The notes beneath the pieces were generated by a model. The model did not search any database, had not been told where the DNA came from, and saw only the letters and a program-made list of their open reading frames with translations. A stretch of DNA of 64,000 nt. It comes from Lepidodermella squamata (Eukaryota; Animalia; Gastrotricha). The stretch lies in assembly GCA_047495785.1 (NCBI GenBank), contig JBLDXI010000010.1, positions 1,426,001-1,490,000 of the forward strand, given 5' to 3'. The position numbers and the translations under genes are program-made. This document shows positions 1 through 64,000 of the stretch, piece after piece; position 1 is the first letter of the stretch; each line of letters opens with the position of its first letter.

Positions 1-3000
1 AGAGACATTGCAGTGTAATTTCCCCCGAATGGTCCACTGGTGTAGATTGGCTCTCGTGACATCTCCCCATTGACTTGATTAACAGATTTTGCATCATTCG
101 CAGCGTAGTCTGCCGTGAGAGGCCAGTAGGCGATCAAAGAAGGATATGCATCGAAAACACCAGAAATGTATGTGCGATTTATCGATTCTAGAAAGAAAGT
201 GAGCTACAATGGGTTTCATATTCCAATGACATACTTATATCACAACTAGGACCAGTCCATCCAGCATCGCAAGAACACACATTGTCCCCGACACAAATCC
301 CATTCCCGCAATTATTGCAATTACCTATGATAAGAGATAAGCTGAGAAAATAATGACATCAATAGAATGAATTTACGAGCGAAAAGTCGGCATATTCCTT
401 TCAACTTTATCAGCTCGTCGATAGTCAAGGCTTTGGAGTGAACTGATCCACAGGCTATTTCACCACCCCAAGTAATTTGATTCGGATTTACAAAGCTAGA
501 ATTAAAGTTTGAAATAAGACTTGACTGGCAGTGGCTATAACGCTAACCTGTAGCCAAGGTAAAGCTTTTGCGAGGTTATCGGGTTTGTCGCTGGACTATT
601 AGTTGTTGCTGAAAAGTACTCGCCACAATAATATTTCTGAACTTTGTTGACACTGTCGTAAGTGATCGCGACGAATACCCACGTTCGATTCAAGGCACAA
701 TTAGCAGGAGTGCCGCTCCAAGTTTCGGATCCCAAAAGTAACTGGCTGTTGACAACGTACCACAAGTACATAGCATAAGTCCCACTAAGGGCAGCAGGAT
801 TTGATGGGTGGTAAAATTCGTAAATCGGACTTGGCGCTTCTGTTGCGTTGACATAAGCCGCGAAGGTCCATGAGCCGTTGCCAACATTCAGAAGAGCCGA
901 ATTAAACGTTACGTACAGCTTAGGGGTCCCTGTTCCCGTTTGAATAGCAGTTGTAGAGTACCCAAATGGACCATCTGTGTACGTGATGAGGTTGTTGGGA
1001 AAGCCATTCAAAACATTCAAAGTGTCTGAAACGTTGTAGATGTAAGAAAACGGCCAGTAAGCAATGAGACCAGTTTGCGCGTTCAAATTTGAATTAATAT
1101 GAGTTTGATTGATTGGAACTATAATAGAGCTAATAAAGGAGAGATACAGTAGAAAGCAGGAACCTACGTGTATCACAAGTAAATCCTGTCCAGGGCGAGA
1201 CGCATTTGCAAATCCCAGCTCCAATACAAGTTCCGCCGTTTTTGCAGGTAAAACCACTACAATCGACAGAAAATAATCGGCACCAATTTTTTACCCGTAA
1301 CATCTCGGCCACCGTGAGGGCTGATTTGATAACTGATCCACACGCGAAACGACCATCAGCCATCACATTTCCATTATCCCTTGTGCCGAAGTAAATATTG
1401 GGAGCCGAGACAGGGGCGCCGCTCAACTTAAGGTCGGCCTTGAAGTCATCGCCGCAAAAAAGCTTGCCCGTTGTATTTGTGCTGTCGTAGACGATTCCAA
1501 TGAATTGCCAGTTGTTGTCCATAGCACAGTCATGAACTAAACCCGCATTGCCCGTATTCCACCAATGTCTGTTATCAGCAGCACCACTTGGCGTCCACTG
1601 CCACCAATGCATTCGCTCGCTTGAAGCGTCAAAAAAGCTCCAAAGTGGCATAGAGGCTCCAGAGTAAATGTACACCCACATTGAAAGAGTGAACGAAGAC
1701 GTGCCGAAATTGAACTGGGGAGAGCTGTAAGTCGCGAATCGATTTTGAGGTGAGCCGGGCCCAATTTCGACCGAAGTGGCTGATACACCAAAAGGACCGG
1801 TTTTAAATTTGTGAATCGCGTTTGTCGGCGTGCCATGAATCGCAAAGTTATCGCATGCATCTTTGTAGCCATACTCGGCCGACCAAGGCCAATAAGCCAC
1901 CAGGGATGGAATTGTTGCGAATTGCGCCCTTACGTAGTTAATATCGACCATGGCTTGAAATCGCTATGGTTAGTTTGGTCTCTTTAGCTTTGAATAATGC
2001 TTACTTGATCTGCATGAAATTCCAGTGTAGGGTGGTTTGCATTTGCAATATTTGTACCCCACGCAAGTCCCTCCATTCATGCAGCCTCCAGGGCAATAAA
2101 CTGTAATGCACGACCCAAATTCTATCTCATGAGTAATATTCACTTTTCTGACCTGAAAAGTACCGACAAGCATCTTTAACTTCAGTCAGCTGTTGCAATG
2201 TTAGCGCTGCTTTATGCATGGACACACATGCGATTTTCATATCTGACCACCACTCGATATAAGTTACACCAGCCATAGTGTTGTTAGGTCTGCAAAAGCA
2301 GGCGAAACTGTACTACTGCATTCTAAGTATACAGCATGCATACCTATATCCAATTGTTAGATTTGAAGTTGTCCCTGCGTAATTTAAGTGTTGTCTCGTA
2401 GCAACGAAATTAGAGCCGCAAAATATTTGCGATACATAGCCAGCAGCGACATTGAAAGTTACAGCAACAAATTGCCATTGTTGTGTAGTTTGACAGGCTG
2501 TAGTAATATCCGTTCCATAGGGATTCACTGGGTTGAAGAATAAGCTGTTTGTCGCCGGAATTTGAAAGAAATGCGCGCCGACGTCATTACCAGGCGTCGC
2601 GGTGAAATTGTTGAATTGAAATATAGGAAATTGACCCGTGGCCATATTGATGTAACCAGCCCAGGTCCATGATGAGTTGCCCAGAGCGAGCTGACTCGAC
2701 ACAACCGTTACATACCTGCCGGTTTTCATATATATCGCAGTGTTTGGGATCGTGAAAGGGCCTCTTGTGTAGATTGGGGCGGCAGGCGTTGAAATGCCAT
2801 CAATTTTATTCGTAGTTTTTGCATCTTTAACTGCAAAGTCTATTGAGAACGGCCAGTAAGCAATCAAACTCGGCAATTGATCGATAACGGACGAAATTAT
2901 CTGTTGATCGATTTTGGGAGCGGTAGCTAAGCAGAAGCAACAAAGCATAAACGATAACAGGGAACAAACCAATTGAAATTACATATCGAACAAGTATAGC

Positions 3001-3916
3001 CATAGTAAGACGAAGTGCAACTGCACCAGTTGTTCCCTGCACAGGTTCCACCATTGAGACAACTAACCGATGAGCAATTAGCTGAAATATCAGCAGTTAT
3101 TTGGTGTGCATTCAATGGAGCGAAATTTACTGGTGAAAAATCTGCATGAATCTTTCAAAAGCTTCATTTCATCCAGACTCAAAGCTTTCTTGTGAATTGA
3201 TCCGCAACTCGACCAGCCGCTGAAGGTTCCAATAGGGTTATCTCTTGAACAGAAGCTGAAATAACAGAAGCAGCTAAAAGTTGTGACTCAAACCTGTGCC
3301 CTACGTAGATTTTGTTTGAGTAAATCATTCGTGAACCAGGATTTGGCATGACCACAGTTGAGGAAAATTCGTCGTCGCAAAAAAGCTTCACAGTATTTGT
3401 TGCGCTATCATACACAATGCCGATGAATTTGTAGCTGCGAATATTGCAGGCCATTACAAACCACTCCGACCCAGTGGCTCCATTGACACCCAGAACCTTG
3501 TCAGCTGTTTGAGTTACGTAAAAGCCAGTGGTCGTCGACGGTGGTTCGAAGTCGTATTCGAAAATAGGCATTACAGCACTGCTCTCGCTGTCCATGTACT
3601 GAGCATACGTCCAAGACGAGCCGTCGCCAAAGTTTAGCTGGGCGTTATTGACTACGATCCATCTTGTGCTGCTGTATTGAAAACCCCCGTTAGCTTGTTC
3701 AAAGGCACCTGGACCCGCAACCATTGGAGGGACTGATACTGCCCCATCTATAGTGTTATGAGTCTTTGCATCTCCAAGCTGATAAGTTGAATCCCATGGC
3801 CAGTAAGCCAAGCAATAGGGCATAGAATTTAAGGCTGCGTATATCAAATCCTGATCGCATAGGGATGGATTTAACAGAAGTGGGACGATCAGAATAAGAC
3901 CAGCCAACTTGAACAT
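1..3916 (-). CDS. Paralog A (5' part; 3' end beyond left edge): multi-exon LamG/pentraxin-like + EGF repeat receptor
   Basis: ATG at 3916 followed by a signal peptide (MFKLAGLILIVPLLLNPSLC). Approximate exons 3916-3293, 3244-3131, 3081-2983, 2926-2344, 2289-2152, 2100-2005, 1953-1168, 1118-548, 495-377, 324-236, 187-<1 with GT-AG introns. Repeated AYWP...SWT...WxFVAxxYD..YC motifs alternate with CxNGGxC EGF units, collinear with paralogs B-F. Confidence 0.88.
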
Positions 3917-4513: not shown

Positions 4514-7500
4514 CTACGAACTGGTTTCATCAAGGCCCTCCGGAACGTCCATTTCCCCATCGACGTGAAGGGTATGCCTTGAGGTCGTCGACATAGGCCT
4601 TGGTTCTTCCAAAGGGTTTGCGATAACGCCATCCAGTTTCGCATTATTCAAGTAACCAGCTGCTGCTAGTCGTTCCTCCTCTTTTGTCTTTTCAATATTT
4701 TGCAGGAACTCTTCAGCCGCAAAACGATTCCTGACCTTGGCTCGAAGTTGCTTTAGCTCACGAGTTCGACTCTTGTCGCGAAAATACTTCGTCATATGGG
4801 CCCAGTTATGCCGCAGTTTTTTCAGATCTCTCGATAGCGTGACATAATCCAAGCATACGATGATTCCGATGAAGAACGCCAAAATGCCTAGAACTGTTGT
4901 CGCAGTTGCAACTGCGGTAGAAGATTCGTAAGTTTTTGGCTTCGCAGCAGCTTTGGCACTGGAGAGGAGTTTATTCAAACTGCAGTAAAGGGGCTGCTTG
5001 TCCCAAGTTGAATTTTCATTGCATCTCCAATAGGCATAAATGCTGGACTGATTAGGGCTCGGCTCATATCCTTGGTTCCAATCGCATTCAAACGCTACAA
5101 TGTCGTTATAAAGAATTGTGTCGATTTCGGATGAAGCGTTCAATATGCGATACGAAGATATTTCGAAGTTTTGCGGCATTTCGCAGCTTACATCTAAAAG
5201 CAACAAATTATATAGGCTTAGCCTGAAATTACAGAGTTATTACACAGGCAGGATAGGGTGTTTGTTGACCAATAACCAGATTCCAAACACATATTGACCA
5301 CTTGATGTACGGGAGTGCCCTCAGTCCCGGGTTGTATGTATAAACTAGCAGCCCCAACCACGCATTGCATCGTGTAAGTATCACCGTAATAATAAATTCC
5401 ACTTTTTCTGTCGATAATTACAGCATTTTGTTCTTCCGTCGGACTTCGACACGTGACACCTGAATAAATAGTGCAATAGCTCGATGAAAGTAACAGATTT
5501 GCATTGAGTTTACTTGAGCACCGCGGTTGGTCGATAGGAGTCCATGTTCCGTTTGCTTGGCAAGTTTTTGTGAAGTAGCTGATGGAGACATCAGGCTTGT
5601 AGCCAGGGTTGCAGCTGTAGGATGCAACACCTCCAGTTTGATTCACGGAGACGTTGAAGTAAGTGTTTATCCCAATAACAAGCGATTTGCATGGCGGAAC
5701 TGTGAATTATACCGTTTTCATGTAGAAGGTATAGGGAGTTAATATCGTAACTTACGGCCGCACTGTGGGATTCCGTCCATCCAGCTCCATCCTGTTGGGG
5801 CTGAGAAAGTACACTTTGCTTTGCCAGTAGTCGAACCGGTCATATTGAAACCCGAATTACAACTGTACTGGACAATATCGCTTTTGTAAAAATTAGGGTC
5901 ACTCGTGAAGTTGACGAAGTAAGCGTTGTAGAGTTCAGGTGGGTTTGGGCAAGGCGTGGTGAGACATTTAGGCCTCTTCGCATTGATCATGAGCCAATTA
6001 CCTGAGGTGTCATTTTTTGTGAAAGGGTCGCAAACATGCATCGCAGTGTCTCCTGGTGCCTCAGCTATAAATCCTTTGTCACAAACCATGATTGCTGATT
6101 GCATGTACCCTGCCAAGCCATTGAACGAAGATAAGGGACGAGCTGCGAGAGACCAATTCGAGTTCGGTGCCAGAGAGATTCCTAGAGGGATGCCCGAGCA
6201 GTTGTTCGCTGGGTTCAGTCTCCTGCCACATGTGTACGGGCAGGTATCTCTTGTTTCAGAACTTTTTTCGCAAAAACCCTGTGCAGCCATATCGCCACAT
6301 GTGCAGTTTTGATCTGAAGACAGTTCCGAGTCGACATCGCACTCACAAGTCGCCCATTTCGTGCAGCTTGCTTGGCAAGATGGCCACATGAAGCCAGGAT
6401 TGGAAAGGCAACTGCCCTGATCTCTCCAGGTCTGGCAGATCGGACCAATGTCGGTTTTCGGCTTCAAACATAGCGTTCGAGATGTGTATGGTGTGCACAC
6501 GTCCGGGGAGGAGCAGTAAAATCCTGTTCTGCATGTCGGCGTACACAAATCTGTCAGAAAAAGTACGAAATCATCAGACTTCTATGATCCTAATGTCAAC
6601 CTTACATTCATCGCATATTTGACCAGTGCGCGTAGCGGTGCATTGGCATTTATCAGGCCCGATACAAGTACCACCATTTATACAATCAGGGTTGCAAATC
6701 GCTAAAAGAAGGATTTTTAAAAGGATTGCAAAGAATTGAGCCCATTTTCTCACGTGTTTGACATCGAGATCCGGTCCAACCCGCAGCACATTGACATGTC
6801 CAGTCAGTCAAACAAGTAGCTCCATTTTGACATTGTGGTGTACAGATAGCTGCACAAAAATTGCTAATTAAATTTCGCAGAAGAACACAAGTTTAATGCC
6901 TACCATTCTCACAGATAGATCCAGTTCGGTTCGATGGGCATTGACACGTATTCGGATTTATGCACGTTCCTCCATTTGTACAGTTAGGATTGCAAACAGC
7001 TGATAAAAGATGAAAAATTATGTGTCGAAATGTATTCTTCGCTGCATTTGACTACTCACGTGTTTGGCATTTGGGGCCACGCCATTGCGAGGTACATTGG
7101 CACGTCCAATCTGTCAAGCAAGTCCCTCCATTTTGGCATTGGGGTGTGCAAATAGCTATAAATTCGACAATTGTATACTACGCTAGGCATTCCAGAAATT
7201 ATCTCACCGTTTTCACAAATGGAGCCAGTACGATTTGATGGGCAGGTGCATTGATTCGGCGCAGTGCATATGCCGCCATTCGTGCAATCAGGATTGCAAA
7301 CAGCTAAAAGGTAATAATATGTTTTTCGTGCATGCATTTTTTGTGAATCTCATAGATTTACGGATATCGCATCTAGCTCCGCGCCATTGAGACGTACATC
7401 CACAAGTCCAGTTGGTCAAACACGTGGCCCCATTCAGGCAATTCGGTGTGCAAATTGCTAGTACATTTGGATTGATCACCGTATGCTGGTTAAAACGTTA

Positions 7501-10500
7501 TTCATACCATTTTCACAGGCAAGTCCTGTTCGGTTAGACGGGCAGGAACAATTGTTGGGAGCTATGCATGTTCCTCCATATACGCATGCCGGCGAACAAA
7601 CAGCTGTAGAAAGAGTAATTCATCATAATTCTATGAGTTGGTGAGCCATACGTGTTTGGCACTGCGCTCCAGACCAAGTACTCGGGCATTGGCAGGTTCT
7701 GTCGAGCTTGCACGTACCTCCATTTTGACACTCAGGCGTGCAAACAGCTATGATTAAATCGGATAAAATAATATAGAATTTTTATTGGCAATTTACGTAT
7801 CGAACAATCCTGGCCTGTCCAAAGAGAGGTGCAGGCGCAGTAATCTGCTCCCGCACAAGAGCCGCCGTTCTTGCAAGTGACCGTGGGACAGCCGACGTAA
7901 AACATGCGGCAGAAGTCTTTAACTTTCAGCAGCTCAGCAAGAGTTAGCTCCCGTGAAAATACAGAGACGCATGCGAAGTCGGAATTTCCTTGAGATTGAG
8001 CATTCACCGTCACCCTTTATTATTTTGGTATTTTTGGGATTCAGTTACTTCGAAACTGGGAAAATTCCTACCTTCTACCAATGGCGAGCCAATCAGACGT
8101 TGGTGGTTGGTTAGCGTACGTTACGTTAGCAATAAGAGAGTCGTTGCAATACATTCTAAAGATTTTCGTCGTTGCGTTGTAAGCGACCGCAACAAACTGC
8201 CAGCGGTTAAGTATCATGCATGAGTTGTTAGTGTACGAATTGGTCATAGAATTGAACCACAGCACGTTGCTCTGCTGCGCCATCCATAGATGCGTTAAAA
8301 CTGTTGTATTCGGAACAGAAAATTCTAATAATGGAGTTTGGGGGGCAAGATAACACTTCGCCCAAAGCGCAAGCGTGAACGAGTTGCCGGGATTAACCCT
8401 CGAATCGCGGATCGAAACGAATCGATCTGTGCCAGATGTAGCCGGCGCCAATCGAACGGCTGTGTATGCCCCTCCGAAAGGTCCGGATGCATAAATCGGG
8501 TCCCTGGAGAACTCGCCATCGATTGGATTAGTCGACTTGGCGTCGCTCGCACCGTAGTCAGCCGAAAGTGGCCAGTACGCAAGAAGGCCAGAAAACGAAT
8601 TCAAGGTGGCCGAGATAAAAGTAGTTAATACGACCTCTGAAACCATTCAAATTATGTTTCGCAAGTAGTAGGCTCAGGTCTTACTTGTGTCGCAAGTTGG
8701 TCCTGTCATACCAGGTGGGCAAGCGCACACGTCATTGCCAACACATGTACCTCCGTTGCAGGAAATGGAACATTTCACTTATTTCACAGAGAGAATGAAA
8801 TTAAAAGATTTAGGAGGTTTAAAATTTAGGTATGATTACCAGCAAATAAACGGCAAATACCCTTCAATTCTATGACTTCATCCATCGACAGAGCTTTCGC
8901 GTGAACTGACGCACATGCGAACCTCCCATCCCAGTTTATTTGCGTTGGATGGACATAGCTAATAATTCAGCAATGAGAACTATTTTGCAATTTACTGTAA
9001 ATAATCAAGAGCTAACCTGAATCCGAGGTACAAAGTTGATGACATTAACGGGGCTGAAGTGGCTGTGTAAGTCGTTGAGCTGAATGTATCGTCACAGTAG
9101 TATCTCTGAACCTTCGTATTGCTGTCATACGTAACAGCGACGAACACCCATTTATTCATGACAGTGCACGCAGCAGCCAGCCCACTTGGAGAAGCAGTGC
9201 TCAGAAGCAGCTGATTATTGGCACTGTGCCACAGATATGTGGCGTATGTCCCGCTGCTAGCCGCGGGATTGGATGAATGCAAATATTCGAAAATTGGCTC
9301 GGGGGCCGAAACAGCATAAATATAGGCAGCCAACGTCCAGGAATTTGCATTCAAATTCAAATTTGACGACTGGAATGTTACATAGCAATTAGGAGTGCCC
9401 AAACCAGCTTGGATAGATGTATCAGAGTATCCGAATGGCCCGACAGCATAGGTTAAAATGTTCGACGGAGATGCAGAGATCGTGTAAACCTTGGCGATGT
9501 CAGTAGCTTGAAAGTCCTCCGACAAAGGCCAGTAAGCAACAATTCCGGTCTGAGATTGTATTGTAGCTGCGATGTAAGTGTTGTTGATCGGCACTGTCAA
9601 TAGAATAATGAAGACGTGGTAATGATATTTCGAAAGGTCAACTCACGCGAATCACACAAAGATCCTGTCCAAGGGGATGGGCATTTACAGATTCCAGCCC
9701 CGACACATGTTCCACCATTCTGGCAGGTAAATCCACTGCACGTTACTGAGAAGAATCGACACCAGTTTTTGACTTGATTCATTTCAGCGGTGGTCAGGGC
9801 TTTTTGAAATATCGAAGCACAGGCAAATTTAGCATCAGCAGGTTGGGTGAAGGCCCGGTTACCCAGAAGGAATGAATCGCTTGAAGACGGCGAACTTGGG
9901 ACATTGACGATAACCCCTTGTGTAAGAAACTGATCGCCGCAAAACAGCTGCTGTGTTCTTGTCGCGTTGTCATAGACAATGCCAATGTACTGCCAGTTAT
10001 TGACCATCGCACAAGAGCCCATGGAACCCCCTGAGCCAGCTCCATTGAACCAGAGCATGTTCGCAGCATTGTACATCCAAAAGTGCATCATCGCAGTTCC
10101 AGATACGTGAAACTCAATTAACGGCATTGAACTTCCGCTGTTGACATTCACCCATACTCCGATGGTGAATGAATTTGAGCCCATTGATAGAGCGGCTGAA
10201 GTGAATGTTCCATAACGTGGCTGCGGCGTTCCAGTACCAGCTTCATATGAGGTACTGGCCACTCCGAAAGGGCCAGCCTGAAATTTGTGGACAGAAGTCG
10301 AAAGTACACCATTAATTCCAGCCAAGGTGGCATCTTTCAATTCATAGTCAACAGACAGCGGCCAATAAGCTATAAGTGACGGGAACAAGGCGAATTGAGA
10401 TCTCACGTAAGAAATATCGACCATTGCTATGACAATTGATACGTTTGATAAGTTTGATTAATTCAAGTCAAGATAAATTTACTTGATCTACACGCGTTTC

Positions 10501-12472
10501 CTGTATATGGCGGCGTACATTTGCAGATATTGTAGCCAATGCAAGTTCCGCCATTCAAACATCCCAGTGGGCAGTTTGCTGCGACGATAACAATATTATA
10601 AGTAAGCTCATACATGGGGACAGGGGATCTAGGGCCTAGATCTATCATCCCCATCCCTTATTGTATGGGATGAGGAATTAGCTTAGATGAAAACAAACAG
10701 TTCCACTCGGGAATTTACCTGAAAATAACTTGCAGGTATCGCGCACATCTATTAACTGAGCGGCCGTGAGAGCAGCAGAGTGAAAGGAAACACAAGCCAT
10801 TTTCACATCTGAGAACGACTCGCCGGCAGGGCTCCCAAAGAGCTTGGATGGGGCTCTGAAAACAATACATCTTAAAATTAGGAATAAGAATAGGTTATGA
10901 GTGTTATACCGATAACCTAGAGACAGCCAAGCACTCGTGGCGGGATAGTTTCCTAGTGTCTGCGTTGCTCCGAAATTCGATCCGCAAAATAAACGCAGCG
11001 TTTGAGATGTTGAAGTTTTTGTGTAAACATATGCGACGAATTGCCACTCTTGAGACAGCTGGCACGACTCAGTGTAACCTCCTGTATGAGGGTTCATCGG
11101 AGTGTAGTAAACTACGTCGGCTGAGTTTTGAAATGCGTGAAAGCCCATCGTAGTCGTGGGGTCAGTGAAATTGTTGAATGCGAAAAACGGCAGGAGTGCA
11201 ACAGTCACAAAATTGACGTAACCAGCCAAGGTCCAAGACGATGCGCCCATCGCTAGTTGGGTTGACATTATAGAGATCAATTTTCCCGAGTTGATATATG
11301 AAGCAGTGCCCGGTGTGAGAAAAGGTCCTATTGCGTAAACAGGAGTTGCCGGGGTCGAAACGCCATCGATTTTATTTGATGGTTTTGCGTCTCTCGCTGC
11401 GTAATTGCTTGTCAGAGGCCAGTAGCCGACAAGGTTTGGCATAGTTGCTAATCGGGCTTCAATGTAACTCGTATCGATTGAAGCTGAATAGGCTGAAATG
11501 AAGATGAGGAAAAGGTCCTTGGCTGTGGTTACCAAAAGTGCTTACTTTGGCTGCAAGTAGAGCCATAGTAAGGCGCCGGGCATTTACAGATATTATAGCC
11601 AGCACAAACTCCGCCATTTACGCAGGAAACACTCGGACATGAGGCTGATGGTAAGAGAAAATGTCAATTTGTTAATGCAGTAAAAACGGTGACAGCGATA
11701 GTATTTGAGGAATCAACTTACTGTAAAAGGCTCTGCACGCCTCCCTGACTTCGATCATCTCGTCTAAAGTGAGCGCACTTTTGTAGAACGAGCCACACGT
11801 TACTCTTCCTGTAGCTGTAGCTGTACTAGTAGTGCCCGGTGAATCTCTTCGGCCGTTGTAGATTTTATTAGTGAAAATCATCTGAGTCGCAGGGATTGGA
11901 ACCGCAGAGCCTGCTGAAAATGAGTCAAGGCAGAACAGTTTGATGGTGTTAGCATCTTTGTCGTAAACGATGCCGATAAAAACGTATTCAGCCATGTTGC
12001 AATACATGGTTACCCATTCGGAGCCGGTTCCGCCATTAACACCAATTATATGGGTTCCAGTTTGCATGTAGTAGAATCCGTAAGTCGCAGGCGCAGGTGG
12101 GTCGTCCCATTCCAAGAACGGCATGTTATACCGATCATCTGTATCTCGAAACTCAGTGTAAGTCCACGATGAACCGTCTCCGAAATTCAGCTGAGCACTA
12201 TTGATGACTAACCATGAACTGCTTGAAAATCCAAAACCAGCGTTATTTTGCTGAAATGCACCCTTTTGATTTGCTGTCAGTGATCCAGACGAGGCAGTGC
12301 TGGTGATTTTGTTGTGATTTTTGGCATCGTTGCCTAGGTAAGTACTGTCCCACGGCCAATAAGCTAAGCAGTAAGGCAGCGATGTTAGAGTAGCAAAGAC
12401 AACGTCAGTCTCAGCCGCTACAACGCTTGAGAAGACGAGCAACACAACGATCACTATTAACCTTCTTTCCAT
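4514..12472 (-). CDS. Paralog B, complete: SP-5x(LamG-like+EGF)-8xEGF-2xShKT-5xSushi-TM-cytoplasmic tail receptor, about 23 exons, about 2,200 aa
   Basis: ATG at 12472 (MERRLIVIVVLLVFSSVVA). Approximate exons 12472-11721, 11644-11546, 11492-10909, 10856-10719, 10578-10483, 10427-9647, 9593-9016, 8958-8840, 8777-8685, 8636-8072, 8014-7797, eight 96-nt EGF exons in 7747-6605, then 6550-5755 (ShKT motif CQTWRDQGSCLSNPGFMWPSCQASC plus Sushi), 5699-5514, 5459-5244, 5193-4514 (Sushi, TM VLGILAFFIGIIVCL, tail, stop). AATAAA on the minus strand near 4376-4381. Confidence 0.9.
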
Positions 12473-27960: not shown

Positions 27961-27995
27961 TCAAACCTTAGAAAATAGATTCTCGGTGTTTTCCA

Positions 27996-50700: not shown

Positions 50701-53700
50701 TCAAAAGTTACGCACAGTCAGGAATTTGTTGAGTTAAAAATAAAAATATCTAACACACTCCTGAACTATTTTTAGCTACAAGCTTGCCCAAAAATCAGCT
50801 AAAAAAAAGTGTAAATCGGACAGACCAAGAAGTTTTAATAGTTGGAAAAATATGAATATTCATAAGGTGCTACTTAATATTCCGAAGCCCTCCGAAGTTG
50901 ATAACTATGTCAAAAAAATTCCGGACAATTATTTTTGATTAGCGGACACCTCATTCCAACTGCTCAAATTTTTCTGCAACTTATGGCACTTAAATAAGAA
51001 TGTCGCAGTTTCATGACATCTCATGAACATATTCAAATTATTGAAACTATCCTCATTTCCTCGGAGCTATTTTTGGAGCTCGTGAGTAAGGCGTCGTTTT
51101 GGTCCGTTTTGCAGGAGATAAACAACCTCATTTCGCACGTGCCAACAATTTCAACTTGTGTCGCCTCAATCCCACCGTGCGGATCTTTTGATTGTCACTG
51201 TATGCTACCCAGATTCATTTTTTATTCATTTTATTAGCACTGGAAAAGTATTTGGATCTAAGCAGTCATAGAGCGAAGAAGGACCGCGGAACTTTTACGG
51301 ATTACAAAAATCGACATGAAGGTCCCCCATTTAGTCTTTCGCTGAGCTCACCGTACGGGCCGTTGGAACTGGTATAGGGATGATCCCTACCAACCCTAGT
51401 GATACCTCGCTCTCTGCTAAGCAGCTTTATAAGAATACAGCCCAGATATTTATTGCTATTAGAGAACTTCCACCGTGGATAAAAATATGAAAGTTGTTCT
51501 CGAGACCTTGAAATTGGAAATTGTTTTTAAAGCTCACCTGTAGTGCAAGCTGATCCGCTCCAGCTCGAAGTACAGGTGCAAGTTTTGTCAGAATTGCATG
51601 TGCCGCCATTCGCACATACAGGGCTGCAAATAGCTGAAGACAAGCAATCATTGTTAGGAATCAATGCTAGAGCAAGGAATTTAAAAAATACATGTATCAC
51701 AGGTTGATCCGGTCCATATGTTCGTGCAGTTGCATTTGTCAGGGGCAGCGCAAGTACCACCGTTTTTACAAGGAATAGTACAAATTGCTGAAACAAAATG
51801 TTTCAAACTGCGGATTGATCACGGATTGATTTCAAAAGATTACGCGATAAGCAAGCCGTTCCTGTCCAGCCTGAGGCACACGTGCACGTGCCAGCATTGC
51901 ACGTACCACCATTCGCGCATACGGGGTTGCATACGGCTGAAAAAGCAAATTGACAGTCATGGTGACAGAGGAAAACCAGCGTGTAATCAAATTTGTATTT
52001 TCACTGCTACTCTTGCCTTGATACTGGACTCGGCATAGTAAAACCGACGTTTTTGTGCTTTTTCACTTGAATAAATTCGTGGTGTTCATAATTAAAGATC
52101 TTTTCTCTGTGAGGAAGGTAAATGCTTCCTACGATGAAGGGTAAAATCTTGCCAATTGCATACTTCCCAATAGCAACTCATTCGGATAGTTACATTAGCC
52201 TATCAATAGAGGCCTACCTGATGTGCAGGCAGATCCACTCCAACCCGACGCACAAGTGCAAGTTTTGTCAGCATTGCAAGTGCCGCCATTCGCACATACA
52301 GGGCTGCAAATAGCTGAAGACAAGCAATCATTGTTAGGAATCAATACGAGAGCAAGGGATTTAAAAAATACATGTATCACATGTTGATCCGGTCCATATA
52401 TCCGTACAATTGCACTTGTCAGGAGCAATACACGTGCCACCGTTTTTACATGAAGTAGTGCAAATTGCTAGAAAATAGCATGATATTATATTGGCTTTCG
52501 GGTAGTTCGAGTAATTACGTGTTGCGCAGGAGGGACCCGTCCAACCAGAAGCACACGTGCACTTGTTGCCAGTATTGCATGTACCGCCATTCGCACAGGC
52601 AGGGTTACACACAGCTGTTAATAACAGAATTATTGCCAAGTCTAAGAGGAAAAAAGTGGGTTATACGTATGGTGCACGTAGTTCCCGTCCATTGCTCTGT
52701 GCAATTACAGATGTTCGAGCCAATACAAGTACCGCCATTTAGACACGGACTTGATGTGCACGAAACAGCGAAGTATCTGCACATATTTCGAACTTGCATC
52801 AGGCTGGATGCGTTCAGGGCGGCTGTGTGAATTGACGTACAGCCCATGTTGAAATTCGCCAGGTACGTAGTGTCACCATATCGACGGCCAATGATCATCG
52901 AATATCTTGCGGCTGGAGCCGGGCTCGTCGCTTTCCATCCGACGAATGTCGAGTTGCAGAAGATACTGAGATTTCCGGTGGCTTTGTCAAACGTAACAGC
53001 GATAAACTGATAGCCAGGTGTGAGCAAACAGTCAACTCTGAAACCAGCCGTATTTCCGACACCGTTCATAGGGTTAAACCATAATTTATCGGCAACGTCA
53101 TGCATCCACAAGTGCATCAGAGGACTCGTGTCACTGTCAGTTAACTCATAAATTGGTTGAACCGACGTTGATACGATTCTTATCAGTGTTGTAATTGTGA
53201 ATGATTGCCCATCCAACAAGTTCAGCAGGCTGTTTCGTATAGTCACGAATTGCGGAGTTGAGCCTTGAACCTGCAACGCACAGGTCGTGCAGTACGCGCC
53301 TCCAATATGAACCGGGCGAGTATTCGGTTCTCCATCGATACGGTTTACCCAGGCATCTGTCGTTCCGAACTCTTGCGTGAAAGGCCAGTAGGCCAGAAGC
53401 CCCGGTAACTCGGACAGTTTCGCTGTTATCACATCCCTGTAAAACATTTGCACAGCTACCGGCAATTCTGTTGAGATCAATCATTAATGAGAACGTCAAG
53501 TCTACCTGTGTTGCAATTAGCTCCCGTCCACCCTGCTTGGCATTTACATTTATTGAACCCCACGCAGGTCCCACTATTCTTGCATAGCGATGTTGCACAT
53601 TTCACTAATTATGGGTAATAAGAGGTTAATTTCCTGAATCTTTTACTAAAAAACCTGAGAATAGCGCACATGTATCCTTGACTTTGAGAATTTCGGTTAC

Positions 53701-56700
53701 GTTCAACGCCGAGGAGTGAACTGAAGCACAAGCAATGCTTCCGTCGAAGTTAGCCCCGGTGGGATCGCCATTGCTGGAAGGAGAAACAATTTAGAACAAT
53801 AAGAAAAGCTCGCAGTTTCTCACCTGAAGCCTAGGTTCAATTTCGAAGATGTCATTGGTGCTGATGATACTTGATAAGTGGTACCGGGGAATTCATCGCA
53901 AAAGTGCCTGACGGTTTTCGACGGGCCATCATAACTCACAGCGATGAAAACCCAGCTAAAAGGCGAAGTTCCGAACGAGCAAGTGTTTGCTGTGCCTGAA
54001 TCAACTTTGAGCGTGTTAGCAGCCGAGTAAAGCCACCGCATCCCGTAGTAGCCGCTACCAACGGTGCTATTCAACGGATTGACATACTCGAAAATGGCCC
54101 TGAAAATCCGGTCATTTTGTAAAAATCAGCCTGGCTCCTAAAGACTACCTCATTATAGATGCTGTAGGAACGACGAAAGCAGTGAAAGTCCAAGATGAAG
54201 AGCCGAAGTTCAAGGCAGCGTTGTCGAAACCAAGGTAGAGCTTAGGATTGCCAGTACCGAATTGTATACCAGTGTCGGGTAAACCGAAAGGACCAGTCGA
54301 ATACGTTAATAAATTGCTTGCAACTCCGTTAATTGTATTCAAGAAGTCTTTAGCTTGATATTGGTAATTTAGAGGCCAGTAAGCTACCAAATCTGTTAAA
54401 TTTCCGATCCAGTTTTTCACGTATGCGTTATCCGTCGGCACTGTAAATCGATTTCCTTGAATACTCTTTAGGATAGAAAGATGGATTGCCACTCACAAGC
54501 ATCACATAGCCGGCCTTCATACGGCGCCACGCAGTTACAACTGTTGTATCCCGAACACGTTCCACCATTAGCACAATTATTTGGGCATGATTCTCACGTA
54601 AGAATTACCGATATTTTAGCAGAAAGATTGAGAAAGCAATGCATACCTGAGAAGCTTTTGCATAAGTCTTTGACATCAAGCAATTGGTCTGTGGTCAAAG
54701 ATGAGCTGAAGACTGATAAACAAGCGATTTTCGCAGAAATGACTTGGCCACCGAAACTCCTATACAAAAAAGGCCATTCAAATTTATGATTGGGTATAAT
54801 TTCTCACCTGCAACCGAGGCAGACAAAGCTCGTTGTTAAAGGAAAGGATGAGTATGTATCGATGGCCTTATAGGCGTCCCCACAGAAAACCTTGCCCTGT
54901 CTTTGCATGTGATCGTATGAGTAGCCAACATACTGCCAGTTTTGAACCATCGGGCATGGAGGATTTTGTACAGCAACTATGGCGTTAGCCCAAAATGCGT
55001 TGTAAGTGCCGAAGTGCCAAAGATGTGTATAGATCCCGCCGCTGCTGTTACTCCATTCAAAGAGCGGCCCTGCATTGCCATCCACCAGATAAACCCAAAA
55101 GGATACAGTGAAAGATGAATTTCCGAAATTCAGCTGGCTGTTGTTGAATACAGCATATTTGTTCTGCGGCGTGCTAATACCGATTTCGACGGCTGTGCTC
55201 CCAACTCCATATGGTCCAGACGTGAAATTGTGGACCGTGTTCGACGGTGTTGGACTGACCTTGGTGCCAGGACTGATATCATTGTAGCCATACTTGTAAT
55301 TCAGTGGTAGATATGCTATCAGAGATGGATAGCTTGCTAATTCCGATGAGACATAATCGTCGACATCAACTATACATTGAGATAGAGTATCACGTCAGAG
55401 TTTGGCATTCCAAGAATTTACTCGAAGAGCACAGATCGCCAGAATAAGGCGGATTGCATTTGCAGACGTTGAAGCCAACGCACGTGCCACCGTTCGCACA
55501 ACTTACAGGGCAGTAAACTATAATAGATAACCGTTACTAATAGTTTGAGAGTTAATATAAGTACCTGAGAACATCCTACAGGCATTGCGGACTTGCAGCA
55601 ATTCGTCAACCGTTAGGGCTTTTGAGTGATAGGTAGCACATGACATGTATGTGTCGCTGACTACTTCTGGCTGTGCGGTGCCACTTGACGTCCAGGGAGG
55701 TCTATTTTTCAATAATTGAAGATATCAACGATCTAAATATGACACTAATGAATTACCTGTTTCCCAGCTTCAGGACATTAGATGTAGATGGGGGCTTCAC
55801 GCGCGTTCGTGCCGGTCCTGCCCAAGTCCATCCGCAAAAATGGCGCATTGAGTAAGAAGTACCAGCAACGTCGACGACGATGGCAACAAATTGCCATTGT
55901 AGATAGGAGACGCAATCGTCTTCAAAGTTATCTCCCGGAGGGTTCAACGCATGAAAATACAATTTACTAGTCGTATGTGTGACTTGGTAAAAACAAGCGC
56001 CCTGATCGCCACGAACTGGGTTATCAAGCGATGCGTTAACGAACTGAAATATCGGAAGATCAGGCGTGCTCCGAAAATTGACAAACGCTGTGAACGTCCA
56101 GGTTCCGGAGCCACGCGATAGGAGATTCGAATATATCGTCATGTAAGAGTTGGCCTTGAAATAAGCTGCAGAATTAGGCGCTAAGAATGGCCCGGTAACA
56201 TAATTTGCAGACGGGAATGGGTTAGGCGTCGAAACAGCATCAAGCCTATTCGGCCCAGCATCCAATCGCCCGTAACTATTCGAAAGGGGCCAGTAAGCAA
56301 CCAAGGCAGGAAGCTTTGCAAGCTCAGCCGTGATGAATGCTGAATCTATCGCAGCAGTATAGGCTAAAGAAAAACAAAGGGTTATTCTTAAGTTGATGAT
56401 TGATGTGATAAGATCCAACTAGTTGTGCATAGACCGCCGTAGTAAGTAGTCGGGCACTTGCAGATGTCCTTGCCTATGCATGTCCCGCTGTTAGAACACG
56501 ACGGTGAACAGACTCCTGAGGAAAAGTACGTGCTGAACCAAGTTCTACTTACGGTGACTAAATTACCAGTGAAAGATGTACATGCAAACTGATGGAGCTG
56601 TAATTTGTCCAGGGATAATGCTTCGGAGTAGAAGGCGCCGCACATAGCTTTATAGTCAGCAGTTGTGACCGGACTCGGCGTGTCCCTTAAAGATGATTGA

Positions 56701-57909
56701 AACAAGAAATCAAGATCTTCGATTTTTCATGGGTGATGACTCTTAAGAATGGTAAATGCCCACAACGGAAAATGCATCCATTTTGCTTCGCCATCCCCAG
56801 AATGTTTTGTGCCGTGTCGGAATTCTCCGAAGACAAAATGTCACAATAAAATCCATGAACTTCTATAGCCCAATTTCGCGCTTCTGCAAGAGAGTTTATT
56901 GATAATGCTGTTAATAATTTGAAGTATTGGGAAAAACAGGATTAGGGCCAGGATAAGTTTCTTAGCTCTAAGCCACTCCGTAAAGTTAGCTGGCAACTAT
57001 TCCCAACACCCTCTCTCATATCAAAAGGAGCGCGCATTTCGGTCATTAATTAACCTAATTAACCTAATCCACTTCATTCGTGTTACACGAAAATACGCCA
57101 AACGCCAAACCATCCAGTGGCTGTAAATGAAAATCATGACCACCTTTCAAACGTGCGATGCTTCTGCTAAACACGAAGCGAAATAGCCATCCCACACGAA
57201 AAACAACTATCGTTTCCTTGAGAAACTAGAAGGTAAGAACTAGAATCCTAATCAGGTGGATAAAATCAGACATCTGTGGACGAATAACCAACCTGTATGC
57301 AATGTAAACTTTGTTCGTCGTGACAATTCGAGAGGCTGGGTACGGCATAACAGTTACAGGCGCGAAAGCGCCATTGCAGTACAGGCGGAGCGTGCCAGCA
57401 TAAGCGTCGTAAACAATAGCTATTAGCTTAAGCCCGCCAATGTTACAGGGTAAAATCATCCATTCCGAACCAGGTAGACCATTCACCCCAATGATGTTAC
57501 TGCCCGTTTGCCAGACGTAGAAACCGTTGGCAGTTCCAACAGGTGGATCGTCGTATTCCATTATTGGCATGACAGCTCTGCTATTGGTGTTAATTACCTG
57601 GGCGTAGGTCCATGACGTAGCTCCGAAGTTCAATTGTGCGTCTGATATCGTGATGTAGCGGCCGCCGGCTGCGTTGTACGATCCGGAAGATTCACCGCTG
57701 TACCCGTTGGCATAACTACTCGACGCCGTGTTCGAAAGTACGCTATTCAACTTATTTGTCGTTTTCGCATCATTACCAGCGTATGAACTGCTCCACGGCC
57801 AATAAGCCACACAACTTTCGAGGGAAACCAACGCAGCGAACGCTAGATCAGTATCCCCATTGACTCGAGACAGAAGGCAGAAAAGGGTTCCAAAAATCAG
57901 GAACCTCAT
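47795..57909 (-). CDS. Paralog F, complete, divergent receptor with a 10-EGF stalk
   Basis: ATG at 57909 ([18 protein letters not shown]). Exon 1 57909-57293, exon 2 from 56685, LamG-like/EGF exons through about 52667, ten EGF exons in 52614-49896, ShKT/Sushi exon about 49845-49051, Sushi exons about 48991-48806 and 48747-48531, last exon about 48472-47795 ([17 protein letters not shown]). Confidence 0.87.
50692..51200. mobile_element. Tc1/mariner-type MITE, 509 bp, in an intron of paralog F
   Basis: TIRs CAGTGAAAATCAAAAGTTACGCAC versus CAGTGACAATCAAAAGATCCGCAC (reverse complement of the right end), flanked by TA at 50690-50691 and 51201-51202. Confidence 0.85.
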
Positions 57910-59327
57910 ATTTTGTGGAAAATACGTTCTTCTTACAGCTGAATGTTATAGCGAGAAACTAATTATTTGACGTTGCCTCTCTAGGCAGTCCTCATTAATG
58001 ATTTGTATGCCTGCTTGAGCGTACGACGCAAAGGCAAAGGTTCGACTTGGTTTACTAGGTCTTTTCTCGCTTTTCATTGCTGCTGCGCATTTGAAAGGAA
58101 CTATTGTCTATTCACTATTCTATATTTAGCTACAAGAATTACGATCTATTCCAACAAAAAAACGTATGTGTCGGGGAAAGTCGGGCATCTCCTTTCTAAC
58201 ACTAAGCGACGATCACCTCGTGCGAAAGAAATATTCCGTCTCAGCAATCACATTTGCATTATTCATGCACAAGTCGGTCGATAAATATGAAAAGCTGCTT
58301 GTAAGATTAAAAACCAGACACTGTGCGCCTTTCGCATTAATTTTTAATCTAGCCCTTACGCGCGCACGCGTGGTTCGTAACAGTACTTGAAGAAAGCCGA
58401 GCTGTTGAAGTTGAATCATCAACTTGACAACGGTAACGGTCTTTAGTACCCGACATCATTATACAGACCAATGATGAAGACAACATCAGGAGGCTTTGAC
58501 AAACGGGCCTGGTTGGCCATTTCTGATTAATAGTCTCCAGTGAGTAAAAGCTCCGCTGATTACGTGAGACTGTGTTTCAGTTGGCTTCAGAGCGTGAACG
58601 TTTATTTAGAATTGATGAATGGGCAAATTCCGCTGATACCGACTTTGTACGCGTTTACTTTTTCAAAGGGCATTCCCTTAAAACTATTGCTCGTCTGCCC
58701 AAGATCGCTGCAAAGCAGGCTCAAATTCTCAGGAGAGGCCTAGCCTTGCTCTATAACTCGGTATTTACGGTAAATCAGTTTCCTCGTTCGATTTCTCTTA
58801 GGAAAAACCTAAGAACACCACCATGGAAGCCTGCGCTTAACCCCACTTTAACCTCTGGATCTTGACGTCGGCTTTGACCTCACGTCGAAATATGATTGGT
58901 TTAACACATTTTCCATGTTGCGGATATTTTACAGCAACATTTTAATGCATCTCTTGGTAATGAAAATTTACCGGATGTTTTTACCGAGGCCTGGAAAAGT
59001 CGAAATACAGAGGGCGAAACTTGGACAATAAAATGCCAATATCTTTCATTTTGAGTAAAAACATTGGCATAAGCTTGTTTTCTTCCCAAATAGGCAATTT
59101 TGCTTCTCTATTATACGATTTCTTCCGCTTCGGTATTCGGTATACAGTAGCTGCGCAATGAGTTTTAACCGAGCTGTATGCGACTTTTTAACCGACGAAA
59201 TTTAACCTAACCTATGATGAAATTAAGCAGAAGGAAGCAAAGACCACAAGCAACGAGCGCATTAGCGTGGCCGGAAACATGCGATCCACTTTGCATAAAA
59301 ATCCCTAAATTATATTGAAAAACAAAC

Positions 59328-59944
59328 CTGTATGCAATGTAAACTTTGTTAGTCGTGACAATTCGAGAGGCTGGGTACGGCATAACAGTTACAGGCGCGA
59401 AGGCGCCATTGCAGTACAGGCGGAGAGTGCCAGCATAAGCGTCGTAAACAATTGCGACAAGCCGAGGCGCGCCAATGTCACAAGCGTAGATCATCCATTC
59501 ACTGCCTGGTTGTCCATTTACGCCAATAATGTTACTGCCCGTTTGCCAGACGTAGAAACCGTTGACAGTTCCAACAGGTGGATCGTCGTATTCCATTATT
59601 GGCATGACAGCTCTGCTATTGGTGTCAATTACCTGGGCGTACGTCCATGACGTAGCTCCGAAGTTCAATTGTGCGTCTGTTATCGTGATGTAGCGGCCCC
59701 CCGCTGCGTTGTACGATCCGGAAGATTCACCGCTGTACCCGTTGTCATAACTACCCGACGCCGTGTTCGAAAGTACGCTATTCAACTTATTTGTCGTTTT
59801 CGCATCATTACCAGCGTATGAACTGCTCCACAGCCAATAAGCAACACAACTTTCGAGGGAAACCAACGCAGCGAACGCTAGATCAGCATCCCCATTGACT
59901 CGAGACAGAAGGCAAAACAGGGTTCCAAAAAGCAACAGCATCAT
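59328..59944 (-). other. Duplicate of paralog F exon 1 (signal peptide + LamG1): alternative first exon or orphan
   Basis: 617 nt, the same length and splice phase as 57909-57293. Open frame from ATG, GT donor at 59327-59326, nearly identical protein except a few changes including YWP to YWL. No exon 2 of its own. Confidence 0.8.
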
Positions 59945-60991: not shown

Positions 60992-63900
60992 TCATCCGGA
61001 TGACTCAGACTCCGGAATGTCCATACCGGCTTCGACGTGACCAAGATCTTTCCTCTGATGAGGCGCTCCAGTTGCTGGTCTATTAGGACTTAATGGGTTT
61101 GGTACAAGCACATCAGACCGCTGGCCATTTACAAAGCCAGCAGTAGCAAGCTGTTGCTCTTCTTTCTTCTTTTCTAAATCTTCCATAAATCTTTCAGACG
61201 AATACTTGTTTCTCAATCGAGCTCGCAACTGGTGAAGTTGCCCCACCCGGCTTCTGTCTCTCAACCATTTTGTGAAATGATTCAGATTATGTCGAAATCG
61301 CTTAATATCTCTAGTCAGCGTCATGTAATCGAGGCATACAACAATACCCAAGAAGAAGCCGAGAATCGATAAGACTGTCGAGGCGGTAGCCACTGCTGTG
61401 TCTGATTCGTAGGCGACTACTTTCGCTGGCTTCGGTGCAGTCAAAAGGGCATTTCTCGAGCATGCAAGCTGCTGTTTGTCCCATGTGGCATTCTCGTTGC
61501 ATCGCCAATACGCAATTTGGTAGGTTTGGTTTTTGCTTGGTTCGTAACCTTGATTCCAGTCACACTCGAAAGCAACGACTTCGTTGTAGAGAATAGTTTC
61601 CACCTCAGAACTCGAGTTCATTATCCGATAATTCGCGATTTCAAAGCTTTGCGGCATCTCGCAACTCACAACTGATAAAAAATTACCAAAAATATACCTT
61701 CTATCAGTTGCCTCATGAAAATACTCACGAAGACATGCCAGTTGGTTGGTCGACCAATATCCAGAATCCAAACACGTATTGACGACCTGACTTAGAGGTG
61801 TGTTTTCTGTACCAGGCTCAATGTACAAGCTGTTAGCACCTTTGCTACATTTCATGGTATAGGTTTCGCCAAAAAAGTAGGTTCCATCTTTCAAATCAGT
61901 AATGTATGCATTTTCTTCCTCCATCGGCTTCGAGCACGTCACAACTGCAAAACGAATAATGCACTTCTTCAGCCCCTATAGTCGCGACGATAGAAATATT
62001 ACCAGAACAGATCGGTTGACCAACAGGCGTCCATGAACCGTTCGATTGACATGTTTTCACAAATAGTTCCAAGCTGGAATCTGTCTTGAAACCTTGCTTG
62101 CAGCTATAAGAAGCGATGCCACCAGTTTGATTCGCAGAAACATTGTAGAATGTGTTGATGCCATCAATTAGAGCTTTGCAAGGAGGAACTATAAATTCTC
62201 AGTATAATATTACTAAATAAGGTATGAGAGAAGCGTTTTCTTACGTAGGCATGAAGCTTTGCCATCAACCCAACTCCAGCCAGTTGAGCCACTGAAAGTG
62301 CATTCCATGAGCCCAGTTGTAGAGCCAGTCATATTATAGCCAGAATTGCAGATATACTTCACCCGGTCGCCCTTTTTGAAGTAATCCAGGGTGGTGGAGT
62401 TGACAAAATAAGCTTGTGCTAAAGATGGCGGATTTGAACAGGCTGTAGCTAAACACGTAGGATAATTGCTATTGATCCGGAGCCAGTTGCCTGTGGCTGC
62501 ATTCGGAGTGAATGGATCACAAACATGCATCCCAGTATCAGCGGCTGATTTTGCTGTAAAGCCCTTCTTGCACAACATCATAGCTGTCTGCATAAACCCG
62601 GCACTGCCATTAAAGGATTTCAAAGGCGGGGCTGATAAGGACCATTCAGCGTTGTCAGGTAAGGTAACACCTTTAGGTACAGCTGAGCAGTTATTAGATG
62701 GGCTCAATCGTCTTCCGCAGGTGTAAGCACATACGATCAGAGCCTCTTTTTCCGTTTCACAGGCTCCAGTAGCCGCCCACTCGCCACACGTGCAGTTCTG
62801 GTCAACAGGCAAACGTGGGTCGACTTCGCATTCACAAGTGGCCCATTTCGTGCATGTACCCTGGCACACAATCCACATGAACCCGGGATTAGACATGCAA
62901 CTGCCCTGATCCTTCCACGTTTTACACATCGGTCCAATGTCATTTCGAGGGGACAAGCAGAGTGTCGTATCGGTGGAAGGAGTGCAAAGGTTTGGGCCTG
63001 AGCACACTGAGCCTCCCGTACACGCCGGAACACAGCGGTCTAAAATATTGTTCAATCTTATAAACACAAATACCCAAAACTAGTCAAAACTCACATTGGG
63101 AACAATCGTCGCCAGTAAAGAAGTCAGTGCAATTGCATTTATCCGGAGCAGCGCACACGCCATCATTTTTACATTCAAAGGTGCAGATTGCTGAAAATAA
63201 GAAAGGATAGAGGCTAGAAAGGTTAGATCAGGTTCAAAGTATTACGCGTTGTGCAGGCAGGTCCACTCCATCCCGGAGCACAAGTGCATGTCTTGTCAGC
63301 ATTACATGTCCCACCATTGGCACATTTAGGGTCACAAAGAGCTACAGCATATTGCAAAGACAGATTAAGAAGATATTGGCGGATAATATGATACAACCTG
63401 TGTTGCAGGTGGCTCCGCCCCATGCCTCTGTGCAATTGCAGGTGTTCCAACCAACGCAAGTGCCGCCATTTAGACACGGATTTGTGCATGATACTGAGAA
63501 GTACCTGCACATATTCCGAACTCTGTTCAGACTGGATGCGTTCAGGGCAGCTTTGTAGATGGACGTACAGCCTAGGTTGAAAGTTGGCGGATTTGTTCCG
63601 TCGTGCCGGCGGCCAATGTACATCCAATAGCTTGTAACTGGAGGGGGGTTCATCGTCTTTGATCCAATAAATGTGGAGTTACAATAGAGGCTAATATTTC
63701 CCGAGGTTTTTTCATATGTGACTGCAATAAATTGATTGCCCGGTGTGAGCAAACAACTTCCCTTAAGACCAGCCGCCACACCACCACCATTCATTGGGTT
63801 GAACCATAGGTTATCAGCACTATCATACATCCACCAGTGCATAGCAAAGGATGTGTCGTTATTGGTAAACTCAACAATCGGTTGACTCGTTGATGACAGG

Positions 63901-64000
63901 ATTCGTATCGTTGCTGCAATTGTAAAAGATTGCCCTGCAAAGTTCAGCAGGCCGTGTCGATAAGTGACGAATTTCGGCGAGGGTGCGCCTTGAACCTGTA
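60992..64000 (-). CDS. Paralog G (3' part; 5' end beyond right edge), closest to F, 2-EGF stalk
   Basis: LamG5+EGF exon >64000-63398, EGF exons about 63341-63246 and 63190-63094, ShKT/Sushi exon about 63039-62245, Sushi exons about 62189-62003 and 61944-61729, last exon about 61671-60992 with [17 protein letters not shown] and stop. Confidence 0.88.

What the first reader, a model, noticed from the sequence alone, without database searches (positions are those of the whole stretch)
1..64000. Tandem array of at least seven diversifying cell-surface receptor genes: candidate immune/recognition locus
Seen: seven same-strand paralogs fill the window and run off both edges. N-terminal LamG-like domains differ strongly between copies, while Sushi-5/TM/juxtamembrane segments ([33 protein letters not shown]) barely vary. 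The array also contains mosaics, relics and a frameshifted copy. Established: birth-and-death arrays with variable distal domains typify innate-immune and allorecognition receptor families. Inference: this is a lineage-specific recognition-receptor repertoire.
Basis: partly seen in the sequence, partly recalled or inferred. Interest (0 to 1): 0.85.

Follow-up and report, generated by a model that had tools for sequence, protein, structure and literature searches.

The report
Tandem lectin-on-a-stalk surface receptor genes
A microscopic animal (probably the freshwater gastrotrich Lepidodermella squamata) carries dozens of copies of a gene for a giant membrane protein with several sugar-binding-type heads on a stalk of variable length; the copies are real and swap parts, but nothing yet shows that they serve immunity rather than feeding, adhesion or the body surface.

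Summary
Observation confirmed, with corrections. Seven minus-strand genes (five whole, two cut by the edges) encode 2,020-2,280-aa type I membrane proteins: signal peptide, five (LamG3 + EGF) units, 2-10 further EGFs, two ShK-like, five Sushi, one TM, ~110-aa tail. They belong to an 11-gene, 108-kb cluster; the TM exon has 37 near-full matches genome-wide. Copies are 54-86% identical in coding DNA, so not haplotigs; spliced junctions occur in a second study's run. Mosaic G4, frameshifted G5 and three relics are confirmed. The EGF stalk changes in two-exon steps; relatives elsewhere carry an extra AbfB sugar-binding module. LamG domains evolve 2-3 times faster than the ShK/Sushi base (dN/dS 0.11-0.18 versus 0.06-0.08) but remain under purifying selection; site tests with simulated power found no convincing positive selection, and the cytoplasmic part varies as fast as LamG. 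The fold is closest to microbial carbohydrate-binding jelly-rolls. Best reading: a birth-and-death family of multivalent glycan-binding surface receptors; immune function is plausible (about 35%), not shown. The scan noted the same family before at two other loci of this genome. New variant of a known design.

The parts
1..3916 (-). Gene G1, 5' part (LamG1-LamG5 start); continues 3,026 bases beyond the left edge; 2,022 aa, 18 exons, 2 stalk EGFs, intact
4514..12472 (-). Gene G2, 2,220 aa, 23 exons, 8 stalk EGFs, intact; G3-like 5' part, G4-like ShK-Sushi3, divergent last exon
15142..26736 (-). Gene G3, 2,216 aa, 23 exons, 8 stalk EGFs, intact frame; four introns enlarged by insertions (523-1,804 nt)
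28691..36522 (-). Gene G4, 2,225 aa, 23 exons, 8 stalk EGFs, intact; reference model; three predicted introns seen spliced in run X2
32640..32750 (-). Recombination breakpoint in G4 inside the LamG5 exon: upstream G5-like (LamG2-4), downstream G2/G3-like
39220..46129 (-). Gene G5, 17 exons, 2 stalk EGFs; frameshifted, so pseudogene or truncated secreted form (582 in-frame aa plus 25)
44070..44078 (-). 11-bp deletion (relative to G4) causing the G5 frameshift in LamG3; not a homopolymer slip
47795..57909 (-). Gene G6, 2,282 aa, 28 exons, 10 stalk EGFs, intact
60992..64000 (-). Gene G7, 3' part (LamG5 to tail); starts at w68,708 beyond the right edge; 2,023 aa, 2 stalk EGFs, intact
33846..34594 (-). 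Example head domain: G4 LamG3, Pfam Laminin_G_3 E 1.4e-9
32997..33692 (-). [not shown]
30772..31963 (-). G4 EGF stalk: eight 96-nt phase-1 exons of two alternating types
29922..30713 (-). G4 exon with EGF-like, two ShK-like and Sushi 1-2 modules
28691..29358 (-). G4 last exon: Sushi 5, TM helix, cytoplasmic tail
27760..27933 (-). Relic of a LamG1 exon, closest to the gene left of G1 (55% aa, E 2e-14)
46644..46948 (-). Relic of Sushi 4-5 exons, G6-like (77-84% aa)
59327..59944 (-). Orphan duplicate of G6 exon 1 (signal peptide + most of LamG1), 91% aa identical, conserved Pro changed to Leu; relic or alternative first exon

Best explanation
A lineage-restricted family of very large single-pass surface receptors that bind glycans multivalently. 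SHOWN: architecture, topology by hydropathy, transcription and splicing of G4-like members, copy turnover, mosaic recombination, stalk-length variation, faster evolution of the heads. INFERRED: the ShK-Sushi-TM base is a constrained pedestal; the EGF stalk, lengthened by unequal crossing-over in two-exon units (2, 4, 8, 10, 14 EGFs), sets how far the head reaches; the five LamG3 jelly-rolls, each an old position-specific lineage, are sugar-binding modules that give avidity and combinatorial specificity; the non-catalytic tail, with a conserved YxxL right after the TM, a basic helix and a conserved acidic end motif, couples to adaptors for uptake or signalling. Repertoire grows by duplication, recombination between paralogs and module gain or loss rather than by recurrent positive selection on codons. 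The likely ligands are foreign (microbial or algal) polysaccharides met at the gut or body surface, for defence or for food capture and sorting; these two cannot be separated here (immune role alone about 0.35).
Against: A shared fold shows no function; identity to all solved relatives is 8-16%. No binding residue was mapped. Window genes have no AbfB. No positive selection. The tail evolves as fast as the heads (dN/dS 0.16-0.17), so faster heads may be plain weaker constraint. No tissue or challenge expression data.
Confidence: 0.55

Rival explanations
1. Structural surface or adhesion proteins: the receptors tether the cuticle, glycocalyx or adhesive-tube secretion to the epidermis, binding the animal's own glycans or matrix; paralogs serve different body regions, and stalk length matches coat thickness.
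For: Purifying selection everywhere and old, stable head lineages; LamG-EGF repeats are typical of adhesion and apical-matrix proteins (own knowledge: neurexin, Crumbs, EYS); 18-48 N-glycosylation sequons; Hydra uses bacterial-type beta-trefoil lectins in its cuticle (PMC3531485).
Against: Pseudogene, relics and frequent mosaics suit a dispensable repertoire better than a structural gene; heads resemble microbial carbohydrate modules more than LNS domains; arabinose-type ligands are not typical animal glycans (own knowledge).
Confidence: 0.25
2. Self, kin or neuronal recognition code (allorecognition or neurexin/Dscam-like): paralogs bind each other or protein partners.
For: Large tandem family of single-pass proteins with variable distal domains and mosaics; Sushi and EGF occur in ascidian allorecognition receptors (own knowledge).
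Against: No allelic polymorphism measured; no positive selection; solitary animal if the species inference is right; no Ig domains; head fold far from LNS.
Confidence: 0.08
3. Largely neutral or dosage-driven amplification of one functional receptor type in a recombination-prone region; differences among heads are tolerated drift.
For: dN/dS of heads equals that of the tail; loops vary slightly more than strands (0.147 vs 0.112); transposon insertions and relics throughout.
Against: 14 of 15 modelled long genes have open frames despite saturated dS between subfamilies (54-60% coding identity), so several lineages have been kept under selection for a long time.
Confidence: 0.11
4. Assembly artefact (uncollapsed haplotypes or MDA chimeras).
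For: If this is the L. squamata assembly it is from amplified DNA with about 3% heterozygosity (PMC11660948); one 360-nt tract is 99-100% identical between G2 and G3.
Against: Whole coding regions are at most 86% identical; G4's donor segments differ from G5 and G2/G3 by 4-15%, so the mosaic is old, not a chimeric read; spliced contigs in a separate 2015 study.
Confidence: 0.01

Closest known systems
Vertebrate selectins (lectin-EGF-Sushi(n)-TM-short tail; tandem cluster)
   Same: Lectin-type head, EGF, Sushi pedestal, single TM, non-catalytic tail; Sushi 1-2 model matches E-selectin SCRs best (Foldseek E 2.5e-8).
   Different: Head is five LamG3 jelly-rolls, not one C-type lectin; ShK-like pair and variable EGF stalk; tens of copies; about three times longer. 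Analogy of design, not homology.
SVEP1/polydom and other pentraxin-EGF-Sushi proteins
   Different: SVEP1 is secreted, single-copy, has vWA/HYR and ~34 Sushi (own knowledge); no TM, no ShK, one pentraxin.
Neurexin / CASPR / Crumbs / EYS (LNS-EGF repeat proteins)
   Same: Repeated jelly-roll + EGF units; single-pass in most.
Biomphalaria glabrata GRC and PTC2 clusters of single-pass transmembrane genes (PMC7494358)
   Same: Spiralian cluster of divergent single-pass proteins with gene gain and loss, synonymous divergence above nonsynonymous, suggested saccharide recognition.
   Different: Those are mapped resistance loci with extreme allelic polymorphism; here no phenotype or allele data, and no sequence homology was tested or found.
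Microbial LamG3 and CBM42 carbohydrate modules (AbnA domain 4, CBM40, AbfB)
   Same: Best structural and feature matches of the head; AbfB in sister genes. Clostridial neurotoxin HCN and trans-sialidase lectin-like domains share the fold at 8-16% identity.
   Different: Here they sit in intron-rich animal membrane proteins; no catalytic, translocation or toxin domain. Direction or fact of gene transfer not tested.

Membership tests
Selectins | N-terminal C-type lectin domain | tested here: not met
   Pfam and fold give Laminin_G_3 jelly-roll
Selectins | EGF, then Sushi repeats, TM, short tail | tested here: met
Neurexin/LNS adhesion proteins | Laminin_G_1/2 (LNS) domains | tested here: not met
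   [not shown]
Pentraxins / SVEP1 | Pentaxin domain above family threshold with Ca-binding signature | tested here: not met
   No Pfam Pentaxin hit; PTX3 profile E 0.04 only; Ca ligands not examined
Laminin_G_3 (PF13385) ConA-like superfamily | Profile match and jelly-roll fold | tested here: met
   LamG3-5 above gathering score; LamG1-2 below Pfam detection but align with invariant Gly/Cys; model pLDDT 88
ShK (PF01549) domain | Six-Cys ShK pattern | tested here: inconclusive
   ShK2 E 0.03, below threshold; ShK1 no Pfam hit but phmmer matches bona fide ShK proteins at E 1e-5 to 3e-8; ShK2 helical in model, ShK1 low confidence
Birth-and-death innate/allorecognition receptor arrays | Tandem expansion with pseudogenes and inter-paralog recombination | tested here: met
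Birth-and-death innate/allorecognition receptor arrays | Positive selection on ligand-binding sites | tested here: not met
   1 of 20 LamG tests survives correction, on one codon; power checked by simulation
Birth-and-death innate/allorecognition receptor arrays | High allelic polymorphism / copy-number variation among individuals | not testable with these tools
   Only one DNA run, as contigs, probably the source sample
Birth-and-death innate/allorecognition receptor arrays | Immune signalling domain or motif (TIR, death, kinase, ITAM/ITIM) | tested here: inconclusive
   No Pfam domain in the tail; one conserved LxYxxL, but only two residues from the membrane
Birth-and-death innate/allorecognition receptor arrays | Immune-tissue expression, induction, or resistance phenotype | not testable with these tools
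   Only presence of spliced contigs

The most novel reading that the evidence does not exclude
The first recognisable pattern-recognition repertoire of a gastrotrich, built from microbial-type carbohydrate modules (LamG3, AbfB) on a conserved Sushi-ShK pedestal and diversified combinatorially (head swapping, stalk length, module gain) instead of by positive selection on codons.
Probability: 0.3. Interest if true: 0.72.

Novelty: new variant of a known kind. Interest (0 to 1): 0.45.

Why it matters
Nothing on gastrotrich immune or glycan-recognition gene families turned up in the paper searches, and no paper with this domain order was found. The family gives concrete, foldable domains for glycan-array tests and a clean case of repertoire building by module shuffling under purifying selection. 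It does not by itself settle an open question, and similar lineage-specific lectin-receptor expansions are common in invertebrates.

Tried and rejected
Positive selection: M7/M8/M8a site models on 26 partitions; only B-subfamily LamG1 significant, from one codon at the omega bound, probably a multi-base change. Word-indexed protein searches with the last exon and with the 66-domain LamG profile found nothing; they only see proteins of similar length, so this is no proof of absence. JGI metagenome scan: no relative. ESM Atlas for TM/tail: only a weak lead to mollusc Sushi proteins (0.82). Hidden domains in the window's long introns: none; in sister genes B1-B3 such 'introns' held AbfB, so my B models lack that module (it does not enter the dN/dS partitions). 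Toxin reading of the fold match to neurotoxin HCN: rejected, shared jelly-roll only. Joined models were used only in local scripts; all remote searches were exon by exon by reference, and the joined full-length search was left out. Sample of the BUCK21 contig could not be traced in the paper's supplements.

Full report
SETTING. The window is G000:C10:1,426,001-1,490,000 of a 121.2-Mb, 151-contig animal assembly, GC about 0.44, with introns of median 53 nt. These figures fit the published assembly of the gastrotrich Lepidodermella squamata (122.8 Mb, 157 contigs, 43.3% GC; PMC11660948). The identification is an inference; no marker gene was checked.

WHAT IS THERE. I annotated one gene (G4) by hand: 23 exons, all GT-AG, 2,225 aa with no internal stop, then built the others with a spliced aligner run locally. 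Seven genes lie head-to-tail on the minus strand: G1 (starts 3,916, runs off left), G2 12,472-4,514, G3 26,736-15,142, G4 36,522-28,691, G5 46,129-39,220, G6 57,909-47,795, G7 (starts beyond the right edge, ends 60,992). Each encodes a signal peptide, five units of a ~230-aa jelly-roll plus an EGF, a stalk of further EGF exons, an EGF-like module, two ShK-like modules, five Sushi modules, one TM helix and a tail of about 110 aa. The cluster continues on both sides to 11 genes over 108 kb. The last exon has 37 substantial matches in the genome plus one relic: 31 on C10, 4 on C48, one each on C28 and C33 (lower bound). The outermost cluster member G10 has a single head, and the C28/C33 copies have a head only about 0.6 kb from the ShK exon, so a short-headed ancestor is likely (inference).

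NOT AN ARTEFACT. Coding identity between cluster genes is 54-86%, far from the ~3% heterozygosity of the probable source. Contigs of run X2 (2015, another study, RNA by guess) skip exactly three predicted introns of G4 (54, 49 and 56 nt, CT..AC on the plus strand); close paralogs may contribute, so this shows expression of the G2-G4 group, not of each gene. Environmental assemblies hold relatives of the membrane-proximal module at 39-57% identity with 54-67-nt introns, one spanning EGF to tail with the same TM and end motifs; one is labelled BUCK21, which I read as the lake metagenome set of PMC8121793 (unverified). No named protein matched beyond generic Sushi and ShK repeats.

HOW THE COPIES DIFFER. 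(a) Heads: a tree of 75 LamG domains groups them by position, so the five-head array predates the gene duplications in this cluster. Same-position heads average 49-56% identity among the window's genes, against 83% for Sushi-5 and 86% for the TM; the juxtamembrane helix (63%) and tail (46%) are not conserved as wholes. (b) Stalk: 2, 8, 8, 8, 2, 10, 2 EGFs in G1-G7, and 14, 4, 2 in neighbours, always even, with two alternating exon types: growth by a two-exon unit. (c) Mosaics: G4 is G5-like over LamG2-4 (69-96% nt) and G2/G3-like (80-96%) from about w32,700; G2 has a divergent last exon; G6-G9 also swap partners; all nine triplet tests gave p=0.0005. (d) Loss: G5 has an 11-bp deletion at w44,074 and would end after two heads; relics lie at 27,760-27,933, 46,644-46,948 and 59,327-59,944. 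(e) Module gain or loss: the gene left of G1 has four heads; three genes at C10:748-786 kb and at least two in the 1.2-Mb cluster carry an AbfB module, a lead taken from note s1-368340 and confirmed here.

SELECTION. At similar dS, heads have dN/dS 0.16 (95% CI 0.14-0.18) in G6-G9 and 0.18 (0.16-0.21) in the B group, against 0.06 and 0.08 for ShK+Sushi and 0.02-0.08 for the TM; the cytoplasmic part is 0.16-0.17. ML single-ratio values for ten genes are 0.10-0.17 for heads and 0.07 for the base. Of 20 M8-vs-M8a tests on heads, one passes Bonferroni (B LamG1, one codon) and two are marginal (p 0.04-0.05). The models are my own implementation; simulated data with 5-8% of sites at omega 3 were detected in both ten-gene runs, the one finished concatenated run and two of four four-gene runs. 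Recombination and saturation limit these tests, but strong pervasive positive selection is unlikely. Variable positions correlate across the five heads, consistent with shared tolerant or specificity loops.

MECHANISM AND RIVALS. The anatomy is lectin heads on a stalk, as in selectins, multiplied: a constrained base, an adjustable spacer and five distinct heads giving avidity. The repertoire is remade by duplication, unequal exchange and module turnover under purifying selection. Foreign glycans are the likeliest ligands (0.55 overall), either for defence (about 0.35) or for food capture and sensing. A cuticle or adhesion role (0.25), neutral amplification (0.11), self or neuronal code (0.08) and artefact (0.01) remain. 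The snail GRC/PTC2 resistance clusters show that spiralian single-pass arrays with dS above dN can still be immune loci (PMC7494358), so the lack of positive selection lowers but does not remove the immune reading. A cecropin-like gene between G5 and G4 is a weak circumstantial hint; it has a paralog on C56 and may have arrived independently.

VERDICT. Real, larger than reported, with a domain order I could not find described, but a variant of a familiar design and already noted by this scan at two other loci of the same genome (s1-368340, s1-407657). Interest 0.45. Limits: only 17 of about 37 copies were fetched; the joined full-length proteins were not searched remotely, by instruction; species unconfirmed.

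Noticed in passing
window 37334-37691 (-): Two-exon, 99-aa secreted precursor (58-nt GT-AG intron): signal peptide, charged propiece, 32-aa C-terminal cationic amphipathic helix (net +8, hydrophobic moment 0.72), cecropin-like in design; no Pfam match; one paralog at C56:130,887-131,180 (61% aa) with shared upstream sequence.
   Followed up: partly
window 18340-20094: 1,755-bp non-autonomous DNA transposon in a G3 intron, 15-bp terminal inverted repeats including TA; at least 17 near full-length copies at 83-96% in the genome.
   Followed up: yes
window 13514-14131 (-): ORF that reads like the C-terminal end of a LINE reverse transcriptase (own knowledge); no Pfam hit.
   Followed up: no
window 16947-17135, 24416-24573, 14415-14557, 38628-38711: Small palindromic (MITE-like) repeats in introns and spacers, some with copies elsewhere in the cluster.
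   Followed up: no
window about 12060-12418 versus 26324-26682: First 120 codons of mature LamG1 are 99-100% identical between G2 and G3 while the rest is 61-95%: recent gene conversion, or a local assembly error.
   Followed up: partly
G000:C66:122-241 kb and C4:2.54-2.60 Mb: Large tandem arrays of AbfB-like modules, including about 20 near-identical units at ~1,010-bp spacing on C66:167-186 kb; other genes or a collapsed/expanded repeat.
   Followed up: no
G000:C7:2.32-2.34 Mb, C32:21-84 kb and 2.18-2.20 Mb, C13, C38, C54: LamG3 domains without the TM exon, some in ORFs above 900 aa: related secreted or other families.
   Followed up: no
L013:3250-3925 (gene B3): About 600 extra bases at the start of the LamG3 exon; possible insertion that disrupts or shortens B3.
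   Followed up: no
L005 (G8) and L006 (G9), intron inside LamG2; L013 (B3): GC-AG introns predicted at a position that is GT-AG in paralogs.
   Followed up: no
L001:1-4244; L002:3951-5060; L007:1739-3843; L008:5738-9613: Cluster flanks: ankyrin-repeat ORFs and two short single-TM paralogs, a NIDO-like ORF on the left; a 7TM-like gene, a retinol-dehydrogenase-like and a ligand-gated-channel-like gene on the right (read by eye).
   Followed up: no
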